From Dimorphilus gyrociliatus (lineage: Eukaryota; Animalia; Annelida): a DNA stretch of 64,000 nucleotides. How positions within the stretch are numbered: the stretch's first letter is position 1; each line of letters starts with the position of its first letter. This document shows, in pieces, positions 6,095 through 54,196 of the stretch. Location of the stretch: positions 1,113,643 to 1,177,642 of the forward strand of contig CAJFCJ010000014.1 of the NCBI GenBank assembly GCA_904063045.1, given 5' to 3'. The position numbers and the translations under genes were made by a program. The notes beneath the pieces were generated by a model. That model did no database searches, had not been told where the DNA came from, and was given only the letters and a program-made list of their open reading frames with translations.

Positions 6095-9000
6095 TCACTC
6101 ATCGAATTCAAAGTCGTCGAAAGCTCCGGCTGATTTACCGTATAATTTGATAAGTTCATCAGATGTTTTACTTCCGGTCATTCTCCTAGAAATGTACGAT
6201 TCTTCAAAATTTCTTAAACGGTCTGTAGTAAATATAGTAGACCGCCTCTGTTGGATTAACTGTGGACTGAGTTGTAGCCATCTATGCTCAAGGCATTCTT
6301 CGGTTGTTATTCTATTTCTATATTGATAAAAATGATAATAAAAGGATTAACGTTCCACACTTCGTATGAAATTAGTTTCATATTACTTTGGTTTCCGCTT
6401 GAAAATCTGATAGATAAACTTCAAGCCATATTTCGTTACGTTATGATAAATTTCGTGGGCATTGTATCGAACATGCTTAATATTGGAGAATGTCTCCCTT
6501 TCATCTTCACCTCTGAATGGCGATACACCGCTAAGCCTGTTTACAGGATGAAGATTACATTATTAGATGAGTAAGAAGCGAAAGAATGCGAAAATGTAAA
6601 TATTTACAGAACAAAAGCGAGAACTCCGGCTCCCCAAATATCCGCCGGCACCCCAACATAGTCGTTGATGACCTTCTCGGGAGCTGAATAGAATATGAAT
6701 TAATAATTAAAGACTATGTAACCCTAACATTAGGTTCATACCCATAAATTCTGCCGTGCCCTCTCGCATTACTTTAATACCCTCGTAGCTTGTAATCTTT
6801 CTCGATCGACCGAAATCTATTAATTTTATATCGTATCTTCTCGGCGATACCGTAATTACGTTGTCGGGCTGGATATTAAATTTTTTCCAATGAATAATTC
6901 ATTATGTAATATTGAATAGTTACTTGTAAATTTAGATGTACAATGCCTCTGTGATGTAAGAATTGTAAGGCGTCTAAGACTTGTTTCATTACGCTTGTTA
7001 CGTGATATTCTGTGTATTTATTACGTAACGACAAAGTTCTAGCAATGTTTTCACCAGATAACTTTTCCAAAACTAGAAATAGGAAGTCTTTGTATAAATA
7101 AGCTTCAAAGAGTCTGACGATATGCTCTTGGCGAACGGCCTATTAGGATAAAATACACATTACGATGATTTATAGAATACACCGGAAGTCTTTAAATATA
7201 ATTCCTCACCTTTAGCATTTCATATTCCCTTAGGCAATCTTCGTGCTTCCACTCGTCGTAACTTACGATTTTAACAACTCTTTTATCATTTTGCGAGCCT
7301 GTTTTATTGCTGCAATCTCTTATTAAAGAGTATCTTCCTCTGAAAATTAGATTATTTTGTAATATGTCACTTTTGACCCAAAACTTTCAAAATTGCTTAT
7401 GATTGATACGGTAATTTAAATTCTTACCTCCAAACTTCACTGCCAAACTTCAAATACTTTTCAGGGTCAACCTTTTCCTGCAAAAACACTTCCTGTTCAA
7501 CAAAGCCTTCGCCTTCTACACTCTTGACCTTTTCTCGTTCAACAGAAGTCTCTCTAGACGGTGTAGGTGTAGCTTCCGGCGAAGGTTGGCAGGTGGCTTG
7601 TCTAGACCTTAGCAATATCTTTTTCGTTGTTGAGTCAATATTAATAGAAGGCGCACCCTGATAAAAATAGTTAAAGGTTTATTATTCTTTATATTTGATA
7701 AGGAATTCCGTTACTTACTTTTGCCTTTGTTTTAACTTCAATTGAAGCCCAACTGTAAGGACTAATACCAAATTTATTTAACGCTGACACTCTAAAGCGA
7801 TAAGTCGTGTCTCTTCGTAAACCTTTCACTAATGCGCATTCATCAATAGAGTAAGTTGCTGTGGTCCAACGTTTATCCCCTTTTAGGAATAACAAATAAT
7901 TTTTTAGTTTTATAAATTTCCCAAATGATTCGTATTGTTTAAAATACTTATTAAATTTTATAAATTACCTAATTTAATATAATCGATTCTGTACGATAGA
8001 ATATATGAATTTCCATCCTGTTCGGGTTCTTCCCATATTAAGAAGGCTTCTATATCTGATATACTAGTTACGTGAGGTCGACCAGGTCTAGATGGATGAT
8101 CTAAAAACAATTAAAAATGAAAAAATTCTCTATTAGTTCCCCTGTTGAATATTAATAAGTACTAAGTGGATTTTATTTACCTCCCAATAACATTCTTGCT
8201 CTGCACGTTACTTTACCATATTTATTTCTAGCGATACACTTAAAGACTCCAAAATCGTTTGGTTTAGTCTGATATATACATATAGATAGATAGAAATTAT
8301 ATTATAATTAGTTTTAGACATCTGTAATCGGGCAATATTAATTGATAAAACCTGCAAGATTGTTAGCGTATGTCGACCTTTACCATCATCCCAAGTTCTT
8401 ACTCTTCCACCTTGAGTTAAAATTTCGTCGTTTCTGTGGGAAAAAGTTTGGATTAAACAGCTATAGTATCAATCGGAGTGTGCGCTTATACAGATCGCAT
8501 GTTTATTCAAGGTAATCAAGAACCTCACCTATACCAACTAACTGTAGGACTTGGATTTCCAATGACATAAACAGAAACAGTACACGGTTCTCCAACGTTG
8601 TATGCCTTATCATTTATTTTTGTTTTAAATATTGGCGGTAAGGCTGAAGGGAAAAAAATTACATGTAATTATTTTAACATCCGCAAAGGTTTACATTATT
8701 AACATGACCGTTATTAGTAATTTTATTTAATAAATGTTACATTTTTAATATTGCAGACAATATTTTTATTATTAATTAAGGGAATTGGAAATTTAGACAA
8801 CATTTTGACTTTTCTTTAAAGATCAGAAAGCTATGCTCCATATCTAACCGAAAACTTTCTTAAATATTGTAATGGGGCTCTTTTTAAAGATTCGTTTGAT
8901 GCTTGGAATTTGCTTAGAGGGACTGAATCGTCTCGAGAGTATTTGCCACTTCGAATAGACTTAAACAGAATGGGCGTTCTGTGCTATAATTTAGTGTATT

Positions 9001-12000
9001 CTACTCTATGAAAAGCTTATTGAACTGATCTAATTTCTTCCATCTTACTGCTTACTTTCATGGTACATTTCCTTGTTGGAATTGACTTGATACTTGGTTA
9101 CATTTTACCAGTTAAAAGGAGTGTTAAATATTAATAATTTCTTTTCATATCTCTAGAAAAGATCTATTCCCTTTGGAGGGTTTTTTTTAGATCTTTAGGA
9201 AATAGAAGAAACTCGCTTGTATTACATTGAGGAAAATAATTACCTTCTTGCGTATCGGCTGAGTTTTTAAGATGCCACAAGGAAGTCTTCTTCGGTTTCC
9301 TTTCCACAACTGCATTATCTTCGGCCTCTCTCTCTAAATCTCGTAAGTCTTGTCTTTCTCTTCGGGACCGACTTCTAACTGATGTTTTCGAAGATGCTCT
9401 TCTATATCTTGCCATTCGTACGTTAAATTTAACATCCTCTGCAGGGAGGAGTTGAGCTTCGGGTCCCGATTGATAAGCGGCTGACCATTCGTACCAAGTA
9501 TCTTCATCCTCGTACTCTTTTTCCCAATCGGAAGATGATCCACTACCAATTGTGGAAGGAGCTGCGCTCGTTATCATGGACGGAGGACCCATAATTTCGA
9601 GCATTCCAGCAGCTCCAGCCTCTTGAAAATCTGTGGCACATGAGAAAACTGACGAAGCTCTTGTTCTTGGTGGTGAAAAGAATCCATCGGGTTCGCTTAT
9701 TTCCGGAAGCTGCAAATTGATTTTTTCAATTATCATTATAAATCATTCTATAAAAAGAATTCGAGAAAAACAGTCGGCTGTGAATAGTTAATTAAAAAAG
9801 TTGAGCTATGATAAACAGGTGGTAAAGTATATAACTGGGGCAAAGATGTGCGAAGTATATCCTCTTTTTATATTATTTCTTGGCATTAACTGTGTCCTAA
9901 TTTCCTACCTGAAGAGCTGGAACAGTCATTGGACCGTTAATGATATCGTTAATCGATCTAGGTTCCACCATGGTTTTAATGGATCGTAAACCGCGTTGAC
10001 ATTTTCGTCGAAAGATATATGATTTATGCCTTTCCAAATTTATTTTGTCCCCTAAACCTCTTCGATTAGATAGATCAATGAAAGGATGGTCAATAGCTTG
10101 GCTAGCGGTTATTCTTTTCCTGTAAAGATTAGCGATAATCTTAAATTTTTATGAACTCTACATTTAAGGATTTTGAAAGATTTACCTAGGGTCTTTAACT
10201 AGTAAACGAGATATAAAATCTTTTGCTTCGCCTGAAACTGTGGAGAAGCTATCGTTAAAATTCCAATCAGCTTTGGCAACATTCAAAAGAGCATCTCTAT
10301 CAGATTCATTAGCAAAAGGTGAAGATCCGGATAGTCTGCAAATCATTAGGAAAAGAAGAATAAATAGAATTGAGAGGTAAAAATCTTAAATAAAAAACTA
10401 ACAAAATATATGCGATAATTCCTACGTTCCACATATCAGCCGAAGTACTTATTGGTTGATTATCAGCAACTTCCGGAGCAGCAAACTCAGGTGTACAATA
10501 CTTGGCATGTAGCTAAAAAGATAATTAAACGTTATAAATAGCCCAAATCAAAATTCCCAAATGGAAATACCAACTGGCAATCTTGGATTTAATTTTCTAG
10601 CAAAACCAAAATCTATGAGTTTTATTTCTTCAGATGAAGAATTTGTTAGCAATAAATTCTCTGGCTGTAAAATATTATTCAATAAACTATCCAACGCTCT
10701 CTAAAAGACACGTTATTTCAAATGGTTTGTTTTGTAATATACCTTTAAATCAAGATGAACTATGTTCTTTGAATGAATATGCTCTACGGCTAATAGTAAT
10801 TGCTTTAGATAATGGGCTGCTTCACTTTCTGTGAATGAATCGTCCTTTACAATTTTTGGTAATAATTCTCCTCCCGTTAATCTATTATGAAAGATTTTTA
10901 TAAAATGGCTGATTTTATAAAACTCTATGTAAATTATTACATTTCTGTAACAATAACAAGTCTTTTCTTATCATCATAACCATCTTGTAATTGCGCAATA
11001 TTATGATGATCTAGGTATGTCATAACTTCCAATTCGGTTGTTAATTCTTCTCTAAGAGCTGGATCGGAGTATCTTAAAAATTTTGCCGCGTACTGATAAC
11101 CTGAATTCTTTTCTATAACCCTTCTAACCACACCGTAAGAACCCCGACCAATCTCGTCTATAACATGAAAATAGTCTTCTATGTGACAGGGGTTGAATTT
11201 CAAATCTCTGATATAATTCGCTTTAACTAATTGAAAGGAAATTACATTTTTAATTAGTCATTGACAAATATTGCAGTAGTTATTAATAGCCAACCTGAAA
11301 CTTTAACGTTTGCAGTACAATAAACTTTGCCAGCAACGTTACTAAGAACGCACTCGTAAACACCCTCGTCCAGTCTAATGGCATTATCAACACTTAGAGT
11401 CCAATGGTCATATTCTTCCCGTCGAATCTTAACTCTATGAGAGTCTGCTATTACTCTCCAATCTTTCTTAAATTCAACGTCAGGGTATGGAATACCGAAA
11501 ACCCGGCATTCTAATTTTCCGGTTGATCTCAAATTGAAAATTTGATCCTTCATGGGTTCCAAGAAAGTTGGTGGATCTGAATTACGGAAAAGGAATAATG
11601 ATAAGGAGGATTTCAAGTAATACTATCAATGTTTTACCGGCCATGTCAACTTTAATATCTTGATTTGCGGAACCAACTTCATTTTCAACGTGTATTTTAT
11701 ATTCACCAACGTCAGACCAACTAAAGTTATTTATTTCTAGGATAAGTTCACCGGAAGCCGCTAAACTAGAACTGTTTTGTTTTTTAAAGAAAAAAAACAA
11801 GTCAAACTATTTGCTTTTTTTTTACCTAAATTACAAACAAACCAGTATTTTTCCCCCATATAAAGTTTCTCCTTGTTAAAATACCAGATAATTTTAGGAT
11901 CTGGATAAGCTTTTATAGCCGTTCGTATTTTCATTATCTTTGTTTCAACACCGTATTGTGTATCGTCCATTTGACCGATAAATTCTGGGGCTATTCCTAG

Positions 12001-15000
12001 TTTTACATTGATAATACAAGGTTAAAATTTAATATCTATAAATGATAGTTTTTTATACTTAAATGTTCAGGGATTTTTTTAGTTCTAGCTTCATTTTCTT
12101 TATCTTGTTTAGACTTTTTCGGTTTTTCAATTTGTTCCTCGTCTTTCACTAATTAAATTTAAATTTTTTATAATTACATTAAAGGGAAAACGTTTCTAAT
12201 TATTTTTTTCTTTTTACCCTCTTTTCTTTTTAACATTGCCGGCATTGACGGTTCACTAATTCCGAACTGATTTGCGGCTTTAACCCTATAATAAACGTCC
12301 TTATTTCTATCCACTTTTGTAATCTATGAAGAGATCAATTAATCGATTAGAAAAGTGAAATATAATCTTAGTTTTTGGAATGCAAACATTATAGGTGGTC
12401 TCTTTTGTATCAGAAACTACTTCGATCCAATCTTTCCCTGGAGGGACTCGCTTTTCAACGATGTACCATATAGGTACCTGCATAGCGTATGCTGGGAGTG
12501 AAGAGGCTTTCCATTTCAAAGCAAGAGAATTGTCAGTCACGTCTGATATTGTAGGTTTTTCCCAAATTGTCCTAGGTTTAACCTTAGATTTTATTGTCTC
12601 TTCTAATTTCTTTTGTTCCTTCTTTTCGGCTTCAGCTGTTTAATTTAACGCAATTGTTTGTGGTTGGTGTGATTAAAACACAAAGTAATTTAATAAGATC
12701 TAATTTTGTTGGATAGTTACGTGGTTTGGCAAACACTTGAGTTGACATGGAAGGATCACTAGTTCCATATTTGTTAAAAGCTTTTACTCGGAACAAATAG
12801 TCTTTTTCTGGTTTATAACCCTTAAATGTATATGTTGCTTCCTTAAGATCGGTGACGAGTTCTATCCAGTTTTTACTTGGTGGACATCTTCTTTCGATTG
12901 TATATAAGATTTCCGTCTGAAAATTAGCATGTAGAGTAAAAGATAGTACTTTATTCGATAATCTTGCATTTGATGAATTACCGTAACGGCTTGGCTTGGT
13001 ACCGTAGCCTCATCCCATTCCAACTTCAAAGAGTCTGCAGTAACATCTGAAACTTGAGGGGCATTCCACGGAGCTCTTGGAGGTAATTTGGCTTTATGCT
13101 TGTCAAAATCAACTTTCTCTTTTGGTTTTTCAACAATTTTTGCAAAATAGGTCAAAGATAGCGTTGGTTCACTAAACCCTGCTGTGTTTTGAGCTTTAAC
13201 ACGGTACATGTAATCTCTATCAATTTCATAATCATCAATTAGTAAATAAGTTTCTTTGATGTCTTTTTTTGCTTCCGTCCAATCACCAGACGGTAACTCC
13301 CTCCTTTCAACTGCATAAGTAACTTCTGACACTGCCACGTTTGGACCTAAAAGAAAGAGTCAAAAATCATCAGAAACTAATAGGAAGGTTGGCAAGAATA
13401 TCTTTTAAACCGTATGTTGCCTCCGGCCAAGACATTTTAAAGGACTTTTCCTTAACATCTGTCATATCCGGTTTGACTAAAGGCATAGTTGGAGGTAGCT
13501 GGAAGATTGCGTGCTTTTTCGGCTTTTTCAGCTTCTTTGGGGCTACAAGCGTAAGAAATAAATTGAATAGAGAATTTAATAAATCTCCAAAAGAAACAGC
13601 AATAATAACCTTCAACAAACAATTTTGCAGTTGAGGAAATCGAACCAAAGCTATTCTCTAGAATAACTTCGTATTCACCATAATCATCCACTTCAGCATC
13701 TTCGATTATTAATTGATAAGAGTTGTTTACTCTAACTGTTCTAATTCTTAGAGTCTCTTCAATAACGACACCATCTTTTTTCCTAATTAACAAAGAAGAA
13801 TTAAAAATATAGACTCTATTCGCATATTTTAATCATTTAATATACCAAATAGCTGTAGGCTTTGGTTCACCGAGAGCTTTACATTCAAATTTCGCTGTCA
13901 TACCAACAATAATGTCTTGTGTAGATAGTTTTTTTGATAAGGTTGGCTTATAACCCATGTCATTATTATCCTCAACAATTTTTCTAAGAAAGAATTACAC
14001 GAAATAAGGTTAATTTCAACTTTTGAACTCTATAAAGTGTTTTTGGGCGAATAAGAATTGCTTACTCTTCATCATCAATAATACTTAAATAGGCTGAAGT
14101 TCGACTTTGGCCTGCAGCATTTGAAATTTTGCAAGAGTAATCTCCAGCATCCATTTTCATACATTTAGAAATGATGAGTGAACATCGGTTTTCAACTGCT
14201 TCGGTTCTTATTCTCTCAGTTTCCTAGATGAATAACAAAGATGGTAGTTATTTTATGTGAAATTGGCAATAGTATTTACTCTAAAACTATATTTCAACTT
14301 ACATAGATTGGTCTACTATTATAGAACCACTCAACTTCCGGTTTTGGAGTACCAGAAACAACAGCATTAAACATATATGTGTACCCTCTGCGAATCTCTG
14401 CGTCTTGCAAGGCGGTTTCAAATATTGGTTTAGTACTTCTTTTTATTTCATCTTCTTCTATTCTTACTTTGCAATTACTTTCAGAGGAACCTCCTTCGTT
14501 CTCCAATACCAAGGTATAAGTTCCCGTATCTTCTAGAACAGTTTTTTCGATTATTAAAGAGGCTGAACCTAAACGATTTTTGTAATGATAGCGATCCGAT
14601 TTAATTATTTCTTGCCCATCTTTCATCCAGGTGGTCTTGGCAGGTTCATCGGCGGTATATTTACAAGAGAGTTTAATTTGAAAGTCCTCGGTTGTTTTCA
14701 AGTCCTTAAGATGTGTATCAATTAATGGTGGGAAAATGGGTTCTACTGATTTCTTCTTTTTCTTATCGGATTTAACCTTCTTTTCATCGCCATCAACCTC
14801 ATCCTTTTTACTTTTCTTTTTCTTATCGCTATCATCGGATATAATAGAGTCCTTTGATGATTTTCGTTTCTTTTCTTTATCTTTTTCGGCTTCCGCATCC
14901 GGGGATTTTTTACTCCTTTTAACTTCTCCATTTTCTTTCTTCTTTTTCTTACTACTCTCTTCGGATGTGATTGAATCCTTCGATTCTCGTCTATTTTTCG

Positions 15001-21000: not shown

Positions 21001-24000
21001 CCTTCAGAAGAGACAACTAGTTGATATTCTCCTGCATCTTCTTTATTAATTTTTGGAATTTTTAAGGAGTATTCATCATTTTTAGAGTCTAGTAGTATTC
21101 TTGAATTTCCTGCAAGCTTTTTACCATCTTTCATCCAAACCACTTTTACTTCGTTTCCTCCCACAATAGCACAAGACAATATGAGTTCTTCGCCTTCTTC
21201 TACACTTAGATTGTTATCTTTGTTCAACAGTTTTATTTTTATTTCTGGCATTGGTTTAGGCTTAGGAGACGATTCTTTTTTCTTTTCTGAAGCTGAAACT
21301 TTTTCAGACTTTTCCGATTCGGTTTCTGTGCTCTCTTCGGAGCTATCACTTTCCTCTGAACTTGTTTCTTCTGAAGAAGTCTCAGAACCCGTGCTACTTT
21401 CTGTTGATTCTGATTTCATGTCCTCAACTTTTTCTGTTTCTGAGGGTTTCTGTTCTTTGTTTTCTTGCTTTTCAACCTTCTCTGGTTCTTCTTTTATCTT
21501 TTCCTGCTTTTCAACTATTTCTGGTTCTTCTATTATCTTTTCCTGCTTTTCAACTATTTCTGGTTTTTCCATAGATGCTTCTTCTATCTTTTCTTGCTTT
21601 TCCACTTTCTCTGGTTCTTTTACTTTGACTTCTTCAGATTTTGGTTGACTTTGAAGATCTTCATTTTCGCTTTTAGATATGGTAGCAGTTTCTTCAACAG
21701 GTGTCGGCTGAATTTCTTCAATTTTTTTGTCTTTGTCTTTTTCAGCTTCTGGTTTTTTCTCTGCTTCAACTGTTCCTTCTTTTAGTTTTGTAGAAGGCTT
21801 TTCTGCGACAGAAGATTCGCTTTTACTTGCTGATTCTTCTTCGCTCGATGTTTCTTCTTCACTGGAAGATTCCTCGCTGCTACTTTCTGTTTCAGATTCA
21901 GACGAAGTTTCCTCTTCCGAAGACGATTCCTCAGATGATTCCTCACTTTTTGAAGACTCAGATTTCGGTTGTTTTTTCTTGTATTTTTCTTCATCTTTTA
22001 TAACATCAGGAGCTTTCTCAGTAGCGACTTTTTCAGGCTCAACTGAAGCTTCTTCCAAAGATTTAGCCGAGTGGTCAGGAGTTTCCTTCAACTCTTCTAC
22101 ATTCTCAGCAACGACCTCTTCCTTTATTTCATTTACCTCTTTTTCCAGCTTTTTAGGTTCTTCGATATCAACTTTTATGGATTTTTCAATTTTTCCAAAT
22201 TCATTTTCAGATAATATTACATAGTCGCCAGAATCAGAAAGTATGGCATCTTTTATTATTAATGAATACTGTCCATTATCCATATTCCAGTCTATTTTAA
22301 TCCGAGAATCTTTTTTTGGTTTCAACTGTTTAGAATCTTTCATAAATTTAATTTCTGGTTCGGGGTCACCTAAAAAACGAAGATTACAGATAAGATTACC
22401 AAAGTTTAGGAAGAGAAATGATAGTGTTATCTAACCTTGACTTTTAAATGAAATTTCAATTGGTTTTCCAGTTTCTAAGTTAATTTTCTCTGGAAGGTTA
22501 ACAATCTTTGGCTTTCTCTTTTCAATTTCTTCCGCCTTTTTCAGTTTATCCTCTTCAGTATTCTTTTTCTCCTCAATAATTTGGACTTTTACTTCTTTTT
22601 CAGCCTTTCCAAATTTATTTTCTGCCTTGATTAAGTATGTACCACTGTCTTCGGTAGAAACTTCCTTAATTGATAAAGTATGAATATTATTTTCCATATC
22701 CCAATCTAATTTCATTCGTTCATTTTTCTTTACTTTAATTGTTTTTCCATCTTTAACAAACTTAATTTCTGGTTCCGGTTCACCTTCTAAATGACATGAT
22801 ATTTTCATTGTTTCACCCGTCTTTAGAGAGAAGTTATCTTGAACATCTTTAATTTTCGGTATGTTTTCTTCTAAGCTTGATTTTGGTTCCTCTTCTTTGG
22901 ATGATGGCTCTTTTTCTTTCGGTTTCTCCTCAATACTTACTTTAACAGTCTTCTCTAATGTACCAAGATTATTTTCAGCAGTTATTTTATATTCTCCGCT
23001 ATCTTTACAAGTACAATCAGATATTTTCAATTTGTAAACATTAGTTTTCATATCCCAATCAATTTTAATACGCTTATCCTTCTTAGGCTTGATGGTTTTA
23101 CCATTTTTCAAAAATTGCACTTCAGGCTCAGGTTCACCTTTTATAAATTGTTGAAATGAAAATATTTTCAAAGGACTTAATACGAAAACATAATTAACTA
23201 TTTATATTTACCAGAAACTCTACAAGAGATTTCAATTACATCGCCCGGATGCTGATGAATTTCATCTGGTAATTCAGCAACTTCCGGAACTTTTCCTTTC
23301 ACTTCAGGTTTCTATAGTTTTTTGAGTAAAGTATTTATAAAGATTTTACAAATCTATTATATGTTAATGGCTTCTTTCGATACCTCTTCTGCAACAGGTG
23401 TTGTATTAACTTCGACAATTTGAGGGGAAGAGAGCTGTCCATCGGAACCCTTGGAAACTATTGCTATTTCATATGGTTTGTTTTCTTTCAACTGACAAGA
23501 TGAATAAACAAATGAAATTCAAATTATAAATATTTTGTATTATTTCATTACCTTGTCTAATGTATATCCTGTTTCGTTTGAAGATATTACAGCTGCTTCT
23601 TTCCATTCCTTTTTCCCTTGTTCTCTATATTCAACAACAATGGCTTCTAAATTATCAAAATTTTCCGGTTTCTGCCATTCAATCGATATAGATTTGCTAT
23701 TAGCCTCTTTAACTTTCAATTCCTCCATTGGTTTAGGTTTTTCTTTCAATTCACTTTCATTTGCCAATTGTTTCTCTTCATCAATAGAGATTTTAATTAG
23801 TTTTTCCTGTTTACCATGTTCATTTTCCGCCACAACTTTATACTCTCCCGAATCATCCGGATTAGCTTCTTTAATTGTCAAAGTATATTTATCGGCATCC
23901 ATATCCCAATCAACTTTAATTCGTTTATCACTCTTCTTTGTTTTAATTTTCTTGTCGTTTTTATAGAAACTAATCTCTGGTCCAGGTGTTCCTATTGAAT

Positions 24001-27000
24001 TTCATTGATAAGAATTAGTTGGTTGTTTAGCATACTGAAAAGCTAAAATATGCAAATTTTACCAGTTGATTTGCAGGATAACAGAAGATCATCGCCAGCT
24101 TTAATTTTAATATCATCTGGTAAATTTTCTAACTTCGGTAATTTATCATTAGGAGACTAAAAAAATTAGCAAGGATTATAAGAATTGAATGATGCTAAAG
24201 CTCATTTATTCTACCTTTTCAGAAACAATTGTCTTAGCTTTAATAGTATCACTTGAAATTAAATCACCAGATGAAAGTTTAGCAGCAACAGAAATTTCAT
24301 AAACTTTGTCTTCGTCCAACTAAAAAATTATTGAAATTATTTAATTAGTTTGTCAAAATCTTTCTAAAAATGTAATTATTTCTATAATCTTACATTTGTT
24401 AAATGTACGAGGGAATCTTGAAGATCAACAACAACTCCTTCTTTCCATTTCTTCTTTCCTTCTTTTTTATATTGTACAATAAATGATTCAACCTTATCAA
24501 GAGATTCAGGTTTATCCCATTCAACTGTAATTTCGTTACTCTTTGTCTCCTTTAATCGTAGGTTCAAAGGCGGTTCCGTAACTGTAGCTACTTCCTTCAC
24601 TTCTTCTGTATCTTTAACGATAGCCTTAGTACAGACAGGTTCGTCAAGAACTGCTGCATTTTCGCTGCTACTTGTTTCGTTGACAGATTTCACTTGGAAA
24701 ATGTATTTTTCATTTGGAGAGAGATTCTCTATAATAGCGGAAGGCTTGTCTGTTTTCTTTACTAATTGAAATTCCGTTTCAGTTGTTTTCCTTCCTTCAA
24801 CAATATATTGAAGATTTTTCGATTCGTCAGGTTCGATCCATTCCAGCGTCAGAGCCGATTCGGTAACATTCTTTACTGATACACTCTTTGGCGCATCTAA
24901 AATGTCTGTTAAATAATTTTTTACTAATTCAATTCAATTCAATGGTAATCATTATTATAAAAAAAATTACCGGAAGTCAGTTCCTCTAACAGTCTTACGC
25001 TTTCAGCCAGTTGAATAGGTTTACTTTTGCCAGCTTTATTCTGAGCGTAGATTCTAAATTGCAGATCGTATTGGCTTCGTAAATTTGATACATTAAATTT
25101 TGCTTGATCGGATGGAATTTCTGAATTATTCAAAAGATTCTTAATGATGTTAACTTTGTCAGATATTTATAAATTGTTACCATCTACATATTCCCATCTT
25201 CCGTTATTTCTACTTAATTCAATAACAAAAGTATCTGGACGATTCGAGTCATTTGAAATGACATCCCAACTTAAAACCACTTCTTTTACTGTCGGCACAG
25301 CGGTAAAATTTGTTGGAGTGGAAGGTCTTGATATAGGCTTAACTAGGTAAGAAGGCTCGTTGAGTTCTATTACGGGACCTTGACCTTGAGGATTTTTTGC
25401 AGATATTCTAAATTTATAGCCAGTGTTTACCTTAGAAAATTACAACTAATGTTAAACTGATAAAATCATTCAAATAAAGAAATACTTGTAAATTTTCAAA
25501 ATCGTAAAAGTTCTTGAAAGCTGGGACATCAGCAGCAACTGTAAATTCTCCCCCATCTTCAGATATTTCAAGAATGTATCCTAAAATGTGGTTTCCGCCG
25601 TCTGTTTCTGGCTCATCCCACGCTAAGCTTATTCTCTTTTCGTCGGCTCTTTGAACCTGTAAATTTCGCACTGCTGAGGGCGCGGTGGGGGGTCTTCTAG
25701 CGCAAACAGGTTTTTCAAGCTCACAGTACTCTCCGACTCCTGCTTCATTCTTAGCTGAGACTCTTACGAAATATCTTTCATTCGGTTGTAGAGTGTCAAT
25801 TTCGACGTTATTTTCGTCTGCCGATGTAGTTTTAACCTAAAATTGATAATCGCGATATTATAACAGGTAATCTGGATAGTAATAAAATAGGAGTGACAAA
25901 CCCAACCTTGCGATATTCTAAATTTGCAAATTCGCATACTTCTATGACATATCCCAAAATTTCTGATCCCCCATCCTTCTCTGATTTTTCCCAGTTTACC
26001 GAAATTTTGCCTGGTCCAAGTTCATTGGCAGAAATAGACGCTGGTTTCGAAGGCTTATCTATTTTGATTAAAAGTATGGAAAATTACTAAAAATTCTATT
26101 AGAAAGTAAATCTTATCGTTTATTATCTTACCAAACGGTAATTTGGTTCTAATTCCATCTATTTGAGCGGGTCGGGTTGATGCTCCTGCATCATTAACAG
26201 CAAACAAACGAAAATCGTATTCTCTATTCTCCTTTAGGTTTTTCACAACAAAACTATTTATATTAGCATCTAGTTTGCATAAACGTTTGAAAGACACTTC
26301 TAATCCATCCTTCATCTCAAGAATATAGCCAGTAACTTTAGACCCGCCATCTTCCGAAGGAGATTCCCATTGCAGTTCAATATAATCTTTCCATATCTTT
26401 GTTTTAGTAAAATTTTGCGGCGAAGCAGGCTTATCTGTTTATTTTCAATGTTTTATTGCATAAATGTGTGTTTTCTTTAGAATATAATCATACCGAAAGG
26501 CAACTTAGCCGTGACTGGATCCTCATTTTCCAAGTAAACACTTCTTCCAGCTTTATTTTCTGCAGCTATTCTAAAAAGATAACTTTCCCCTTCAAATAAA
26601 TTATCCAAGGTAAACGTTGTTACATTAGCCGGCACTGCACCAGACTGTTTATCAAATAGATCAAGATAAAACCTTAAATTATCAACTAATTAGCTCTTAA
26701 ACTTTACCTGTAGCCATATAGGTCTCGATATTTCACGTTTCTCAATGACGAAACGTTCAATGGGAGAACCACCATCATCCTCGGGTTTCTCCCATTCAAT
26801 CTTAATTTTATCAACATTATAGCTAACAACGTGAAAGTTACTTGGTGCTTGCGGTACATCTGCAAATGTTGGGAAATATAAATAATCTATTCGAGATTGC
26901 GTGTAACAGTAATTACTAAATGGTAAACGGGGTTGTATAGGTTCGAAAATTTCGGCGCTGGTTTTACTAAGTCCAACTTCATTCTCAGCAAATATTCGGA

Positions 27001-30000
27001 AAAAGTACGATGTACGTTGAAAGAGATTATCAACTTTAAATTCGTGAGTAGCACTATTAACTCGACCACATTTCATCCATGTTGGAAGAGAATTTTCTTT
27101 CTTTTCAATTATGAAATTAGTAATAGGTGAACCTCCGTCAAAATCTATTAATAAAAGATGAATATTTCTGTTGAAATATTAAAGAATTAAAAACATTGTC
27201 TTTATGACCTGGATTATCCCATTCAAGGACAACATAATCGCTCCATGTCTCCTTGACTTTTAAATTTTTCGGTGCATTTGGTTCATCTAAAAAAAATATC
27301 AAGGTATCATTATTAATATTCAATTAAAACTATCAAATTCTTTTCAAACCATATGGTAGTCTAGCCAAAATAGGTTTTTCCATTTCAAAGGGTTCGCTTG
27401 TACCTGCCTCATTTTCAGCGTATATTCTAAAAAAATATTCATTTCCTTCAAATAGTCTTGTTGCTTTGTACTTGGATTCTCGAGCTGGTAAATCAACTAT
27501 AAATATCCATCTAAAAACATTGTTCTAATTGAAAGATGTAATCATATGACAGATTTTAAATGTTTAATAACCCTGGTCTTTTAGCATCCCTCTTTTCAAT
27601 GACATAGTTTGTAATTTCATTACCACCGTCGGACTCGGGTTTATCCCATTCTAAGTAGACAGAATCTCTGTTTATTTCAATAGGACGTAGATTTAGAGGA
27701 GGAGATGGTTTATCTAGAAAAAGAAAATTGAGTATGTTAACTGTTTTGAGAAACTTTTCCATTTACCGAATGGTAGTTTTGTAGTAATAGGTTCTTTAGT
27801 TTGTAATGGTTTACTAGGTCCGACTCTATTTTCGGCAGTTATTCTAAAGTTATACGAATTACCCTATAATTGAATAATAATCAACTGTGTTGAAATCTTT
27901 CAGTAAATAAAAATAGTTTGCTCTACAAACCAAAAATAGTTTATCAACTTTTAAACGTCGTTCCGTAGGTTTTAGCGTTTCGACAATATTCCAAGAATTA
28001 CTAAATTGGTAAATATTTATGATATATACATTATCATATCACCATATTGTATACCTACCTATATCTTATTACTTCCGACTTTTCAACAATGTATTGAGTA
28101 ATCTCCGAGCCACCGTCACATTCTGGTTGATCCCATTTAAGAATTACAAAATCTTTATTAATCTCTTCAAACTCTAAATTTTGGGGAGGGCCAGGAGCGT
28201 CTATTATATTTGAAATAGTCAATAAATTTTCTATCAAGTAGAGCTTAATTATGTTATTTAAAACGAACCAAATGGTAGTTTAACTGTAATACTTTCAGCG
28301 AGTTCTATAAATTCACTTAATCCAATTCTATTTTCGCAAGCAACTCTAAATAGATATTCAGAATATTCGAATAGTCTGGAAGCCTTATATTTTTTAACAG
28401 AACTATCGACGTAACCAGCATTAACCCAAGTTTTCGTTGGTGAAGCTGTTAATAACTTGTCAATCTAGAAAAGTAATCAATTTGAATAGGTAATTAGAGA
28501 AAAGATATAATTGTATCTAAATAAAAACAAACATGATATCCAGTTATCTTTTCATCTCCATCATTTTCAGGCTCTTCCCATTGCAGTACAACGTAATCTC
28601 TAGAAACCTCAATAGCTTGCAAGTTTCTTGGACTAGATGGTACGGCTGAGAAATTATATTTTTATGAAAAATAGAGCCGTCTGGCAAAGTCGGTTAAGTA
28701 TTAAAATACTGACTTCTTATTTTTACAGAGAACTCGGCAGTGTCCCTGCCGTGTGAATTTTCAGCGAGTAATTTATATATTCCAGAATGAACGCCTTGAA
28801 CGTTACTTAACTTTAAAAATGCGTAATTATCATCGTATTGAAGAAAAATATTGCTCGATGTAGTTAGCTAATTAAGAGAAGTTTTGTTTTCTATAAAAAA
28901 TATCTTTTCATTAAAATCTTATTACCTTTTGATCTTTAAAGAACCAATTTATCTTAGGCCTAGGATAACCTGTTACTTGAGCCTCTATGTAAACAAGAGA
29001 GCCCTGCTTAGTCCTCTTAAGTTCTTCTAGAAGTTCTTCGGGATAAGTGATTTTAGGAGCTAAATGACAAAGGCAACGACATATATATCTAGATGACTTT
29101 CTGTCTATTGAAAGAAACCTTCTTTCTTTTCTTCAATACTTTCTTCTTCGAATTCTTCTACTCTGGTAATATACTCCTCAATAACAGCAGCCTTATCAGT
29201 TTTAGTGACCTGAATCTGAGAAGTTTCCTCTTCAGTAGATCTCTCATAAGTGAGAGGAGTATAACCGTCATTACCTATCAGCATCGTCAATATATATTTA
29301 AACAGTTATCAATCACATTAAAATGTTAACCTCTAACAACAAGAAAAGCTGTCGTAGTAGCAACACCTTCCGAATTCTCAGCTCTGCATGTATAACATCC
29401 TTCGTCGTGGGAACTTACATTCTTAACAAGTAGAGTAACAATTCCACTCTCTTCATCGTGCCTTATATTATATCTTTCGTTATCTGTTGTTTTATATCTC
29501 TATTATTATTTTATTCATTATGATATTTGTATTCAAATCACTGAAAAACATTGTAACATTTTCACTATTTATGATAGAAAGTATATAAATATAGAAAGCG
29601 ATTTGATAAAGTCAAAAAAACAAAGCCCGCCTTAAAAGTAACTTTCTTTTATAATATATTTCATAAAGCTATGTAAATAGGGATATTCTTATTAGGCCTG
29701 TTTAGTTAATTTAACAGTTTTATATGAAAGAACTTTACTAATAATTATATGATTAAAAGTACTGTTAAACCCTCATTTTACTATAATAATTAATCATAAT
29801 TTATTATCTTTTATTACTCTTCGGTTATTAAGAAAGTATATAAAGCAAACTTAACTACTCTTTGAGTTTAGGAAGAGAGCAATATCCTGTCCGAAATCTA
29901 GAACTTTTAAATCATTCGTACTTCACATACGGTCTAAAGAATGCAGCTTTTTAACGTATAGTCATTAAAAAGTTACTTCACGAATCTTGTTTTACTTAAA

Positions 30001-31212
30001 TACGAATTGAGAAAAATGTATGTTGTTCTCCTTTTACTGATGAACTTTAACCTTTGACTCATTAGAAATAGGAGAAATTTGAAGAAACGGAAGAAACTAT
30101 TTAGGGTTTTATCTCTTTTTTGAATGTAAATTAGTTAGTATGTTTATTAGGAATTGGATTTTCCTCGAAAAACATTATGCAATACTTAATTAATAGAATC
30201 TATTTATTCAGGTTTAAAATAAATAGTTATGAGTTAAATTTTATTCTCCCCGACCACTTTACACATTTCACTCCTGCGAACTTTAATATTTTTATACACA
30301 GATGGTTTTTTTTATATATCAGACGTTTCTAACGAAAATAAACGAAATATTCGAATATTTAACCGACTTTTTGACAAGAAATGAGGGATTTTTATGAATA
30401 AATATTCTACATTTTTGTGTTTCTTGGTAAGAAAAAATCTGCACAGTAAAAGGAACAAGTGAAAAATCTAAATATATCTTGATATTTTTTATTGAGAAGT
30501 TGTAATTTCTCTTCTTTCTATCATTCTCTCTCTCTCTTTCTCTTGCTATATAGTTGAAGAACATCTTCGTATTTTGATTATGTATAAAAAAATATCAGTA
30601 AGCAATATACCAGGAATATAGCAATGTTTAGAAATAGTAAAAGTTTTCCTTCCACCTTCTCTACCTATCTATCTCTTTTTCACTCTTGTTTCTCTCCCTT
30701 CCTCTCTCTCTCTCTCTCTCTCTCAGACAGACGCACACACGTACAAAATATTCCCATTCTCATCGTTTTCTCTACAATCATTTCAAAAGTTATCTTTAAT
30801 AAATAAAGAAGATTTTCGTTTGCTTGAAATTACGCAATATGATTCATTAAAGAAAAAAAAGTAAAGGTAAATAGAATAGTAATGTGCACCAATTAGAATA
30901 AATTTTATAATCAGTTAAATGAAATTGTTTTTTTTACTTATTTTTGAATGGAAAGGATGAAAGAAATCTTGTAAAATATATAAGCGTATCATCAAAAGTT
31001 CTCTTGTTGAAAAAGTTTGCTAACAATTAGTAGGCTATAAAAATTGGGCCTACATTTACGTTTTCTGACTTTACCAACCGGCTAAAAATTTAATACTACT
31101 GACAAGTAATATCCACATCGTCCTTAAACCAAGTTATTCTAGGAACCGGAAATCCAACAACTTGACACTCAAATCTTTGAGTTTCACCGTAGGGTAGAAT
31201 GTCTTCGCTCAT
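6095..31212 (-). CDS. OBSCN: Giant obscurin/UNC-89-like sarcomeric protein (Ig, Fn3, SH3-DH-PH RhoGEF, two C-terminal kinase domains); many exons, order of 6,000 aa by hand estimate
   Basis: Probable start MSEDILPYGETQRFECQVVGFPVPRITWFKD at 31212; stop TGA at 6097-6095 after AFDDFEFDE. Dense run of Ig (W..KDG, D.GEY) and Fn3 (P..P.NL, W..PE.DGG..I..Y) exons joined by short GT-AG introns, plus SH3, DH, PH and two kinases. The junction from the last upstream Ig into the SH3 exon (intron about 18229-18281) is phase-compatible. Confidence 0.9.
6260..7460 (-). other. Obscurin kinase domain 2 (probable pseudokinase)
   Basis: WRGRYSLI, VVKI, HLNLQPDN (Asn codon 6930-6932 at the catalytic Asp position), DFG, GTAEFMAPE, DIWGAG, LSGVSPF. 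Confidence 0.85.
10080..11180 (-). other. Obscurin kinase domain 1 (canonical catalytic motifs)
   Basis: IGRGSYGVV, AAKF, HLDLKPEN (Asp codon 10749-10751), DFG, TPEFAAPE, DMWNVG. Confidence 0.9.
16439..16456. repeat. (TA)9 microsatellite in an obscurin intron
   Basis: Direct read of the sequence. Confidence 0.9.
16510..18130 (-). other. SH3-DH-PH RhoGEF module of the obscurin-like gene
   Basis: ALTDYNPTDTDGLALVEGQEVEVLD...WLC...GWVPPSYL (SH3); RYALTELIESERDYIRELERVL and QLPFNRLDDY (DH); downstream PH-type exons (KVFLFEDRLL...). Confidence 0.88.
21460..21620 (-). repeat. Coding tandem repeat, 39-nt unit (13 aa, EPEIVEKQEKI.E), 4 copies
   Basis: Anchor tgcttttc recurs at 21466, 21505, 21544 and 21595 (spacing 39, 39, 51). 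Confidence 0.85.
24420..28645 (-). other. Array of about 11 tandem fibronectin type III domains in the N-terminal part of the obscurin-like gene
   Basis: Eleven successive Fn3 N-terminal motifs (e.g. PSSPRNL, PGPPQNL, PSPPLNL, PNAPKNL, PQAPSNF, PASPQNF), each followed by W..P..DGG-type motifs, with no interleaved Ig. Confidence 0.75.
30702..30724. repeat. (CT)n microsatellite in the 1.6-kb first intron of the obscurin-like gene
   Basis: Direct read of the sequence. Confidence 0.9.
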
Positions 31213-41689: not shown

Positions 41690-41915
41690 CTGTTTGTACA
41701 ATTTATGAACTTAGGCCTAGTTGCAGAAGAATAATCAGTTAAATTTGTTCAATTACTTCGCTCTAGCGAAGGCAAATTCTCATATCTTAGGTTGGTAAGC
41801 CAATAGTCCGTCGGTTAGCATTTCCAGCTCTTGTCTTTGAAAGGGTGGATCGCTTATTGACAATTCAATAACTGACTAAGCTTGGGCTAAAGGATTCTAC
41901 TTTGTTTATGTTTCT

Positions 41916-53800: not shown

Positions 53801-54196
53801 AGGAATATCCACAGTTGTTTTTCGCGTTTCCCAAACCGGGGAATTATCGTTTTTATCATTAATGTTAATTCGAACTTTTACAGATTGGATAGCTGTTCCA
53901 ATCGTTTTTGTAACATGTAAGTCAAAAAAGCACTCTACCTTTCCTCGGCACACGTCGACAGCGTCTCTATCGATAACCTTTGTTGTTGTTAATACACCAG
54001 CAGGGCTTAAGTTAAATAATCCAGAGCCTTGATTGAAAGATAGAAAAATTGGCGGAGTCGAACTAGTCGACTTTTTAGTCCTTGATAAATCACCTATTAA
54101 GCTACCGGCTTTTAAACCTTCGAAGACAGAGTAGTTAGCCACCTCTTGAGTTTTGACTACTGCAAATAGGCAGACAAAAGCTGTAATGCAAAACAT
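47869..54196 (-). CDS. Delta-type protocadherin (7 EC repeats, TM, cytoplasmic DSGRGS motif, C-terminal SHV)
   Basis: Exon 1 (51686-54196) encodes the signal peptide, 7 cadherin repeats (DRE/DYE and DxNDNxP motifs, CRGKVEC C-x5-C in EC1) and the TM segment. Exon 2 is 48209-48368 (SADSDSGRGS). Exon 3 is 47869-48047 and ends KASHV*. Splice phases (0, then 1) match. Confidence 0.92.

What the first reader, a model, noticed from the sequence alone, without database searches (positions are those of the whole stretch)
6095..31212. Hybrid giant muscle protein: titin/twitchin-like Fn3-Ig N-terminal half fused to a centrally placed obscurin SH3-DH-PH and dual-kinase core
Seen: one apparently continuous spliced frame runs Ig2 - Fn3x11 - Ig - Fn3 - about 9 Ig with acidic linkers - SH3-DH-PH - about 6 Ig with a K/D/E linker - Fn3x3 - Ig2 - kinase1 - linker - Ig - Fn3 - kinase2. 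The critical Ig-to-SH3 junction (intron about 18229-18281, phase 1) is intact. Established: in C. elegans UNC-89 and Drosophila obscurin the SH3-DH-PH sits at the N-terminus. In vertebrate obscurin it follows an Ig-dominated array with very few Fn3. Inference: a long Fn3-rich, thick-filament-type N-terminal extension in front of the RhoGEF may be a distinct lophotrochozoan architecture that combines twitchin-like filament binding with M-band signalling.
Basis: partly seen in the sequence, partly recalled or inferred. Interest (0 to 1): 0.75.

Follow-up and report, generated by a model that had tools for sequence, protein, structure and literature searches.

The report
Worm obscurin with extra Fn3 head
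This is one expressed giant muscle gene, the worm's counterpart of obscurin/UNC-89, and its only unusual feature is a run of eleven titin-type Fn3 domains inserted near its front end, which the octopus, brachiopod and another annelid counterparts I could examine do not have there.

Summary
A single minus-strand gene (ATG 31212, stop 6095-6097, about 87 exons, about 5,600 aa) encodes Ig2-Fn3x11-Ig-Fn3-Ig9-SH3-DH-PH-Ig6-Fn3x3-Ig2-kinase1-linker-Ig-Fn3-kinase2.

Transcript contigs of a public run skip 15 GT..AG introns here. One is the 54-nt Ig-to-SH3 intron (18228-18281). The contigs chain the Fn3-side exons to the RhoGEF/kinase side, so the two-gene alternative is unlikely.

It is an obscurin/UNC-89 orthologue. 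It has the SH3-DH-PH cassette and the Ig-Ig-PK1...Ig-Fn3-PK2 tail. Its best relatives are Owenia, Lingula and Octopus proteins (the latter two labelled 'titin-like'), amphioxus obscurin-like and crinoid unc-89-like.

The claim of a 'lophotrochozoan architecture' is not supported. Owenia, Lingula and Octopus start with the same Ig1 (63-71% identical) but have only Ig domains or disorder before SH3. Trematodes carry the RhoGEF near the N-terminus; a rotifer has three Ig before it.

The Fn3x11 block resembles titin A-band, MyBP-C and myomesin Fn3, not the Fn3 domains of those orthologues. It looks like a lineage-specific insertion at an expansion-prone site. Its function is untested.

Verdict: a new variant of a known family, of moderate interest. 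Earlier scan notes do not cover this gene.

The parts
6095..31212 (-). Whole coding region of the obscurin/UNC-89 orthologue. ATG at 31212, stop at 6097-6095, about 87 exons, about 5,600 aa.
   Evidence: Open-segment map. My own splice-aware exon chain. Pfam hits. RNA contigs.
31104..31212 (-). Exon 1: start codon and the N-terminal half of Ig1, the conserved N-terminus of spiralian obscurins.
   Evidence: 63-71% identical to the first Ig of Octopus, Lingula and Owenia proteins.
29484..31103 (-). Intron 1: 1,620 nt, phase 1, splitting Ig1. It is by far the largest intron in the gene.
   Evidence: GT..AG ends and the residue-for-residue fit to orthologues (DIT|YNERY).
28727..29483 (-). C-terminal half of Ig1, an acidic linker, and Ig2.
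   Evidence: Ig profile hits and tblastn.
24215..28645 (-). Eleven consecutive Fn3 domains (Fn3 1-11). Most are split into two exons, with KLPFG/DKPxxP linkers.
   Evidence: Pfam fn3. Fn3 profile halves in register. No Ig hit in this range.
23384..24156 (-). Ig3 followed by Fn3-12. Fn3-11/Ig3 and Fn3-12/Ig4 look like a duplicated pair.
   Evidence: I-set plus fn3 in one exon. (Fn3-11 vs Fn3-12, 42% identical).
18282..23311 (-). Ig4-Ig12 array with acidic and PEVK-like linkers. Includes the 1,368-nt exon 21002-22369.
   Evidence: Introns confirmed in RNA.
20286..20591 (-). Cassette exon of 306 nt holding the C-half of Ig8 and the N-half of Ig9. It has a GC donor. Skipping it joins 20671 to 20095 in frame.
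   Evidence: RNA joint 20670->20094 and a separate contig over 20285-20591. Sequence and frame check.
18228..18281 (-). The critical Ig12-to-SH3 intron: 54 nt, phase 1.
   Evidence: Sequence. Skipped in the 10,378-nt RNA contig.
17890..18115 (-). SH3 domain, in two exons.
   Evidence: SH3_2 1.4e-4 on the first half. The second half, WLCKDSLKTGWVPPSYL, is read.
16956..17779 (-). DH (RhoGEF) domain, spread over five exons.
   Evidence: PF00621 profile 2-53 and 123-169. tblastn to the DH of Octopus, Lingula and Owenia, 31-33% identity, E 1e-29 to 1e-32.
16513..16879 (-). PH domain, in two exons.
   Evidence: SOS1_NGEF_PH profile 11-56 and 60-105.
13610..16282 (-). Ig13-Ig18 with a K/D/E/S-rich linker (about 14730-15390).
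12218..13542 (-). Fn3 13-15, the ancestral obscurin Fn3 domains.
   Evidence: They are 44-52% identical to the post-PH Fn3 of Lingula, and score 50-60 bits against Lingula and Octopus.
9909..11990 (-). Ig19-Ig20 and kinase 1, with canonical HLDLKPEN, DFG and APE motifs.
   Evidence: The best PDB hit is obscurin PK1, entry 8ak2.
8643..9709 (-). Interkinase linker region. The coding part is 9244-9709 (no Pfam domain, S/R/E-rich), followed by a 600-nt intron.
6095..8643 (-). Ig21, Fn3-16 and kinase 2, which reads HLNLQPDN with DFG and APE kept.

Best explanation
The stretch is one transcription unit: the annelid orthologue of the giant sarcomeric scaffold obscurin/UNC-89.

Shown:
- The exons are contiguous and in frame.
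- RNA contigs carry the splice junctions, including the junction from the Ig array into SH3.
- The family-defining modules are present: SH3-DH-PH, then Ig-Ig-kinase1, a linker, and Ig-Fn3-kinase2.
- The first Ig is the conserved N-terminus of spiralian obscurins.

Inferred from comparison: the segment between the conserved Ig1-Ig2 head and the SH3-DH-PH cassette is a site that different lineages have expanded independently. Lingula and a rotifer have one Ig there, Octopus 17-23 Ig plus disorder, and vertebrates about 50 Ig. In this worm's lineage the site received a block of 11(+1) Fn3 domains of the titin A-band / MyBP-C / myomesin class, plus nine Ig with spring-like acidic linkers.

Inferred mechanism, not tested:
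- The protein anchors in the sarcomere through its Ig1-Ig2 head.
- The rigid Fn3 rod, about 11 x 4 nm and so roughly one 43-nm thick-filament repeat, lies along the thick filament.
- The disordered linkers act as springs.
- The RhoGEF and the canonical kinase 1 signal locally.
- Kinase 2 (HLN in place of HRD) serves as a scaffold pseudokinase.
For: One gene:
- Short in-frame GT..AG introns run throughout.
- Contigs of run X1 skip 15 introns, so the run is RNA.
- Record 1 (10,378 nt) runs from 20096 through the Ig12/SH3 junction to 17616. It has 8,543 nt more, against 7,711 nt of modelled exons down to the stop.
- Record 4 (6,421 nt) ends at 21536 and has 4,887 nt upstream of 23137, against 4,672 nt of modelled exons up to the ATG.
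- Record 3 and the 20670->20094 joint link the two.
- The published genome of the species that the scan's notes name for this genome reports no spliced leaders and a median intron of 66 bp (PMC7854359). The RNA-confirmed introns here are mostly 54-85 nt.
- The flanking genes are unrelated: RanBP2-like on the plus strand from about 33.5 kb, and another gene below 5.1 kb.

Orthology:
- The best hits of the SH3-DH exon are Owenia (51% identical), amphioxus obscurin-like and crinoid unc-89-like.
- The best PDB hit of PK1 is obscurin.
- Ig1 is 63-71% identical to the first Ig of Owenia, Lingula and Octopus.

Insertion:
- Those orthologues lack Fn3 before SH3.
- Fn3 1-12 are 30-60% identical to one another but only 22-38% to the orthologues' Fn3. 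Fn3-6 scores at most 16 bits (phmmer) and 28-35 bits (blastp) against them, but 46-59 bits against single titin, MyBP-C and myomesin Fn3 domains.
- Fn3 13-15 behave as orthologous to the post-PH Fn3 of Lingula and Octopus.
Against: - No single molecule was seen from end to end. The contigs are de Bruijn contigs. One 12-nt stretch (21524-21535), inside a repetitive exon, is not covered by the listed pieces. The 20670->20094 joint has only 28 letters on its short side.
- Where the unseen parts of records 1 and 4 lie is inferred from their lengths only.
- Contig depth is about 6 times lower for the 5' part (17 vs 102). This could mean that most transcripts lack the Fn3 head.
- Lineage-specificity rests on three orthologues that retain their N-terminal region. 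One is partial and all are gene predictions. No close relative of the worm could be examined.
- Thick-filament binding, localisation, GEF activity and kinase activity were not tested.
Confidence: 0.72

Rival explanations
1. The Fn3-rich head belongs mainly to a minor long isoform. The dominant products start downstream, from an internal promoter or alternative first exon feeding the exon at 20095. They would be RhoGEF-kinase isoforms, like the shorter UNC-89 and obscurin isoforms. This rival is compatible with a single gene.
For: Mean contig depth is 102 for the 3' contig, against 17-30 for the 5' contigs. The 3' contig starts exactly at the exon boundary 20096, which is a branch point. C. elegans unc-89 uses three promoters (review PMC12812942).
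Against: Depth falls steadily with distance from the 3' end, as expected from 3' bias on a roughly 17-kb mRNA. The open frame just upstream of exon 20095 has no ATG. No alternative first exon was seen, although 4 joints were not listed.
Confidence: 0.3
2. The N-terminal Fn3 block is ancestral, at least to annelids. It was lost in Owenia, Lingula and Octopus, or their gene models miss it.
For: The Owenia model is flagged partial and has 570 residues with no domain after Ig1. The Octopus and Lingula models lack the kinase end, so they are imperfect. Fn3 1-12 are only 30-60% identical to one another, so the block is old.
Against: Three independent predictions in three phyla go from the conserved Ig1 to SH3 without any Fn3. 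Missing about 22 well-conserved exons three times over is unlikely. A rotifer has Ig1-Ig-Ig-SH3 as well.
Confidence: 0.17
3. These are two adjacent genes: an Ig/Fn3 filament protein and a separate RhoGEF-kinase gene. The apparent continuity would be chance or an artefact of contig assembly.
For: No single record spans the whole stretch. One small gap (21524-21535) is unbridged. The depths of the two halves differ.
Against: The unbridged gap lies inside one 1,368-nt open exon. Spliced joints connect every exon from 23311 down to 17616. No intergenic space, stop codon or start context exists between the halves. No operons or spliced leaders are reported for this species.
Confidence: 0.06
4. A genome mis-assembly joined a piece of a twitchin- or titin-like gene to the obscurin gene.
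For: The Fn3 block is of the titin class. According to the scan's notes, the genome holds separate titin-like and twitchin genes.
Against: The conserved obscurin Ig1-Ig2 head lies upstream of the block and the obscurin body downstream, so two precise in-frame joins would be needed. An independent RNA contig of the right length covers the 5' part. Fn3-11/Ig3 and Fn3-12/Ig4 interlock with the Ig array.
Confidence: 0.03

Closest known systems
Vertebrate obscurin (giant kinase-bearing isoform, OBSCN)
   Same: Both have a central SH3-DH-PH preceded by a long domain array and followed by Ig-Ig-kinase, an interkinase linker and Ig-Fn3-kinase. Both are giant modular sarcomeric proteins (review PMC12812942).
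   Different: The vertebrate pre-RhoGEF array is almost all Ig (about 50), with very few Fn3 and an IQ motif. Here it is Ig2-Fn3x11-Ig-Fn3-Ig9. The pattern of kinase catalytic residues also differs.
C. elegans UNC-89 / Drosophila Unc-89 (ecdysozoan obscurin)
   Same: Both carry the same modules and the same C-terminal two-kinase arrangement with an elastic interkinase region. The best PDB hit of PK1 is obscurin PK1, entry 8ak2.
   Different: In ecdysozoans the RhoGEF is at the N-terminus and dozens of Ig lie between PH and the kinases. Here only 6 Ig, 3 Fn3 and 2 Ig lie between them, and about 3,000 residues precede SH3.
Predicted lophotrochozoan obscurins labelled 'titin-like': Octopus vulgaris (5,978-6,595 aa) and Lingula anatina (2,933 aa), plus an unnamed partial Owenia fusiformis protein
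   Same: Ig1 at the N-terminus is orthologous (63-71% identical). SH3-DH-PH is 31-35% identical by tblastn. The Ig and Fn3 domains after PH are orthologous to Fn3 13-15 here.
   Different: None has Fn3 in front of SH3. Octopus has 12 Fn3 and Lingula 6-7 Fn3 after PH-Ig4/5, against three here. The models lack the kinase end.
Titin A-band, twitchin, projectin, MyBP-C and myomesin (thick-filament Ig/Fn3 proteins)
   Same: Fn3 1-8 carry the W..P..DGGS.I..Y.vE signature and PF-G/P..P linkers. They score 46-59 bits against single titin, MyBP-C and myomesin Fn3 domains. The Ig2-Fn3n-Ign order recalls myomesin.
   Different: There is no Ig/Fn3 super-repeat, since all 11 Fn3 are consecutive. There is no Fn3-kinase-Ig module of the twitchin type at that end. 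The scan's notes place separate titin-like and twitchin genes elsewhere in this genome (not tested).
SPEG
   Same: Both have the Ig-Ig-kinase...Ig-Fn3-kinase tail.
   Different: SPEG has no SH3-DH-PH and no long N-terminal array.

Membership tests
Obscurin/UNC-89 family | An SH3-DH-PH (RhoGEF) cassette in one polypeptide with Ig/Fn3 arrays | tested here: met
   SH3_2, RhoGEF and SOS1_NGEF_PH on consecutive exons. Spliced to Ig12 in RNA.
Obscurin/UNC-89 family | A C-terminal tandem of two kinase domains arranged Ig-Ig-PK1, disordered linker, Ig-Fn3-PK2 | tested here: met
   Pkinase hits at 11157-9909 and 7318-6095, with Ig19-20, Ig21 and Fn3-16 in the expected places.
Obscurin/UNC-89 family | Closest relatives are obscurin/UNC-89 proteins rather than Trio/Kalirin or twitchin | tested here: met
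   The top hit is an Owenia protein with Ig...DH-PH-Ig-Ig. Amphioxus 'obscurin-like' and crinoid 'unc-89-like' are also among the hits. Trio/Kalirin-type proteins (two DH domains) also appear, but at 28-33% identity. The best PDB hit of PK1 is obscurin.
Obscurin/UNC-89 family | Localised to the sarcomere (M-line or A-band) and expressed in muscle | not testable with these tools
   Only presence in one RNA-derived contig set is shown. The tissue is unknown.
Twitchin/projectin/titin family | Regular Ig/Fn3 super-repeats and a single kinase flanked Fn3-kinase-Ig | tested here: not met
   Eleven Fn3 run in a row with no Ig between them. The pairwise identities show no super-repeat period. There are two kinases, in the obscurin arrangement.
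   Octopus, Lingula and Owenia have Ig or disorder only before SH3. Trematodes have the DH near the N-terminus.

The most novel reading that the evidence does not exclude
A miniature annelid has grafted a titin/MyBP-C/myomesin-class Fn3 rod onto the head of obscurin. The rod is eleven domains long, about the length of one 43-nm thick-filament repeat. One molecule would then both measure or bind the thick filament and carry the M-line RhoGEF/kinase signalling module. That would be a fusion of jobs that vertebrates divide among titin, myomesin, MyBP-C and obscurin.
Probability: 0.18. Interest if true: 0.6.

Novelty: new variant of a known kind. Interest (0 to 1): 0.4.

Why it matters
[quoted passage not shown] It says nothing about spiralians.

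The comparison made here suggests a different picture. A conserved Ig1-Ig2 head and a conserved RhoGEF/kinase body are separated by a site that each lineage has filled differently:
- three Ig in all before the SH3 in Lingula and a rotifer;
- many Ig in Octopus and vertebrates;
- a titin-type Fn3 rod in this worm.

If the Fn3 rod binds thick filaments, it would be a natural experiment in how sarcomere rulers and signalling scaffolds can be combined. The host has a very compact, tractable genome.

On its own, though, this is a domain-architecture variant of a well-known family, without functional data.

Tried and rejected
They went through long 'carrier' proteins, because exon-sized queries cannot reach giant proteins. 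They yielded Lingula and Octopus orthologues but no further annelid or any close relative of the worm. The third search mostly returned nematode UNC-89 and bird titin.
- The representative search with the SH3-DH exon returned no protein of the window's own species. I therefore could not see how the public annotation models this gene.
- The look-up of encoding contigs on the Owenia protein found nothing.
- Two metagenome contigs that carry SH3-DH exons 52-58% identical to this one (L001, L002) have long introns and show no Ig or Fn3 exon in the available upstream flank. They are uninformative.
- PDB searches with the Ig1 half-domain and with Fn3-13 did not discriminate obscurin from titin or contactin.
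- My first exon-chain model over-split the gene. The second is still wrong in places. It puts two spurious micro-exons in intron 1. It misses an exon near 28000-27931. It truncates the second half of Ig2. It breaks up exons of kinase 2. It also cannot see the GC donor at 20285. I used it only for coordinates and length estimates.
- I considered and rejected the idea that the N-terminal Fn3 block is the Octopus post-PH Fn3x12 block moved to the front. The two sets are not alike.
Every search was exon by exon, by reference. As a result, whole-protein Pfam architecture, structure prediction of split domains and full-length phylogeny were left out.


Full report
**What is there**

All long open segments between 6.1 and 31.2 kb lie on the minus strand.

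Pfam scans of stop-free exon pieces, given by reference, found:
- fn3, down to 2e-18;
- I-set, down to 2e-35;
- the first half of an SH3 (SH3_2, 1.4e-4);
- RhoGEF profile positions 2-53 (1.9e-6) and 123-169 (weak);
- both halves of a SOS1/NGEF-type PH domain (9.5e-9 and 2.3e-4);
- two protein-kinase domains (2.6e-13 and 1.7e-12).

Because many domains are split across two exons, I counted them by the register of their halves. The result is:
- Ig1-Ig2;
- eleven consecutive Fn3 (28645-24215) with no Ig between them;
- Ig3;
- Fn3-12;
- Ig4-Ig12;
- SH3-DH-PH;
- Ig13-Ig18;
- Fn3 13-15;
- Ig19-Ig20;
- kinase 1;
- a domain-free linker;
- Ig21;
- Fn3-16;
- kinase 2.

A splice-aware exon chain of my own gives about 87 exons and about 5,600 codons. 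It is imperfect in several places, and I used it only for coordinates and lengths.

**Is it one gene?**

The Ig12-to-SH3 intron is 18228-18281: 54 nt, GTAAGA...ACAG, phase 1.

One public run holds the stretch. Its contigs skip 15 segments with CT..AC ends on the plus strand, which are GT..AG introns of the minus strand, so the run is RNA-derived. These introns are 54-85 nt, apart from one of 575 nt.

- Record 1 (10,378 nt) runs from 20096 across the Ig12/SH3 junction to 17616. It has 8,543 nt more. My model has 7,711 exonic nt from there to the stop, so the record probably reaches the 3' UTR.
- Record 4 (6,421 nt) ends at 21536 and has 4,887 nt upstream of 23137. My model has 4,672 nt up to the ATG, so it probably begins in a 5' UTR of about 100-200 nt.
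- Record 3, and a joint from 20670 to 20094, connect the two.

The only stretch not covered by the listed pieces is 21524-21535. It lies inside a repetitive exon of 1,368 nt that is open throughout.

The scan's earlier notes name the genome as Dimorphilus gyrociliatus. I did not verify the species. The best protein hit is annelid. The intron sizes fit the published median of 66 bp, and the same paper reports no spliced leaders, which argues against operon-like packing (PMC7854359).

The neighbouring genes are unrelated. A RanBP2-like gene lies on the plus strand from about 33.5 kb, and another gene lies below 5.1 kb.

I conclude that this is a single gene. Two reservations remain. No single molecule was seen end to end. 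The 5' contigs also have about six-fold lower mean depth (17-30 against 102). That fits 3' bias on a roughly 17-kb mRNA, but it could also mean shorter isoforms are more abundant, as is known for unc-89.

**What family?**

The SH3-DH exon was searched against 1.84 billion representative proteins. The best hit was an Owenia fusiformis protein (51% identical over this exon). Amphioxus 'obscurin-like', crinoid 'unc-89-like', a rotifer protein and trematode proteins were also among the hits. Trio/Kalirin-type proteins scored in the same range or higher, at 28-33% identity.

The best solved relative of kinase 1 is obscurin PK1, followed by twitchin, DAPK and MLCK. Together with the Ig-Ig-PK1...Ig-Fn3-PK2 tail, this meets every sequence-level criterion for obscurin/UNC-89.

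Kinase 1 has HLDLKPEN, DFG and APE. Kinase 2 reads HLNLQPDN but keeps DFG and APE. That pattern is the subject of another note of this scan.

**Is the Fn3 head a lophotrochozoan feature?**

Further searches through long carrier proteins recovered Lingula anatina 'titin-like' (2,933 aa) and Octopus vulgaris 'titin-like' (5,978-6,595 aa). Their architectures, by my profiles and by Pfam, are:
- Lingula: Ig3-SH3-DH-PH-Ig4-Fn3x3...Fn3x4.
- Octopus: Ig17-23, then about 1,600 disordered residues, then DH-PH-Ig5-Fn3x12.
- Owenia: Ig1, then 570 residues with no domain, then Ig-Ig-DH-PH-Ig-Ig.
- Rotifer: Ig3-SH3-DH followed by more than 30 Ig.
- Trematodes: the DH lies within the first 150-420 residues.

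The first Ig of the worm gene matches the first Ig of Lingula, Octopus and Owenia at 63-71% identity in its first half and 44-53% in its second. It also matches the first Ig of the rotifer protein. The ATG at 31212 is therefore the conserved obscurin N-terminus. That alignment also defines intron 1, 1,620 nt inside Ig1.

None of these orthologues has Fn3 between the head and SH3. What is special here is an insertion into a segment that other lineages filled with Ig domains.

**Where does the block come from?**

Fn3 1-12 are 30-60% identical to one another, so the duplications are old. Fn3-11/Ig3 and Fn3-12/Ig4 look like a duplicated pair.

Against the Fn3 domains of the Octopus, Lingula and trematode orthologues they reach only 22-38% identity. 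Fn3-6 scores at most 16 bits by phmmer and 28-35 bits by blastp. Yet Fn3-6 scores 46-59 bits against single Fn3 domains of vertebrate titin A-band, cardiac MyBP-C and myomesin-1.

By contrast, a half-domain of Fn3-14 alone scores 51-60 bits against the post-PH Fn3 of Lingula and Octopus, and Fn3 13-15 are 44-52% identical to those of Lingula.

So the three Fn3 domains after PH are the ancestral obscurin ones. The N-terminal block is a different class, the thick-filament type. I could not identify a donor gene. The scan's notes mention separate twitchin and titin-like genes in this genome, which I could not read.

**How it probably works**

By analogy with characterised obscurins (review PMC12812942), the protein is a sarcomeric scaffold. 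Its parts would work as follows:
- a conserved Ig head for docking;
- spring-like acidic, PEVK-like and K/D/E linkers;
- a Rho-family GEF;
- one canonical kinase and one probable pseudokinase.

The Fn3 rod is inferred to lie on or bind the thick filament, because its closest relatives all do. Eleven domains of about 4 nm roughly equal one 43-nm myosin repeat. This is suggestive and no more. None of it was tested.

**Novelty and score**

No paper in the library describes spiralian obscurin architecture. The 2026 review lists only ecdysozoan and chordate types. Fn3-rich lophotrochozoan obscurins are already in databases under the name 'titin-like'. I saw the Fn3 head in front of the RhoGEF only here.

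This is a new variant of a known family and is well supported as an observation. It has no functional evidence, and its phylogenetic breadth is unresolved. Interest 0.4.

**Limits**

Every search was exon by exon, by reference. The read-laying tool could be used only once, on 17600-23599. The Fn3 block itself and the kinase end are therefore covered by RNA only by inference from contig lengths.

Noticed in passing
window 20286-20591 (-): A 306-nt cassette exon encodes the C-half of Ig8 and the N-half of Ig9. RNA shows both inclusion and skipping (joint 20670->20094). Skipping keeps the frame and would make a hybrid Ig from Ig8-N and Ig9-C. The included form appears to use a GC-AG intron (20285-20096).
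   Followed up: partly
window 6924-6948 and 10743-10760 (-): The catalytic loop of kinase 2 reads HLNLQPDN (Asp to Asn, Lys to Gln) with DFG and APE kept. Kinase 1 reads HLDLKPEN. This agrees with the scan's note s1-084264.
   Followed up: partly
window 17600-23599, RNA contigs: The 3' contig has a mean depth of 102, against 17-30 for the 5' contigs, with the step at the exon boundary 20095/20096. This is either 3' bias or an abundant shorter isoform. It is unresolved.
   Followed up: no
window 29484-31103 (-): The first intron (1,620 nt) is about 25 times the typical intron and contains (GA/GAGA)n-type simple repeats. In this species large introns are reported to hold open-chromatin peaks (PMC7854359), so it may hold regulatory elements.
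   Followed up: no
window 21400-21700 (-), inside exon 21002-22369: There are tandem imperfect repeats of an EKQEKI(E/K)EEPE(I/K)V-type unit within a long acidic, serine-rich linker. The linker looks PEVK-like and is a candidate spring. The RNA contigs break here.
   Followed up: no
window 22603-23078, RNA loose ends: One contig fits 22603-23078 but carries about 255 unmatched letters on each side. This may be an alternative junction among the near-duplicate Ig4-Ig6 units, or a paralogous transcript.
   Followed up: no
window 35171-37504 (+), 39488-41710 (-), 51665-54277 (-), 530-1531 (-): The neighbours have long intron-poor ORFs. They are a RanBP2/Nup358-like protein (two RanBP1 domains and a Zn ribbon), a RING-B-box-NHL (TRIM-NHL) protein, a cadherin with six or more repeats, and an AIP3 (actin-interacting protein 3) domain protein.
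   Followed up: partly
L001 16269-17156: The metagenome contig that carries an obscurin-like SH3-DH-PH (animal DNA in an environmental assembly) has a reverse-transcriptase ORF inside the DH-PH intron region.
   Followed up: no
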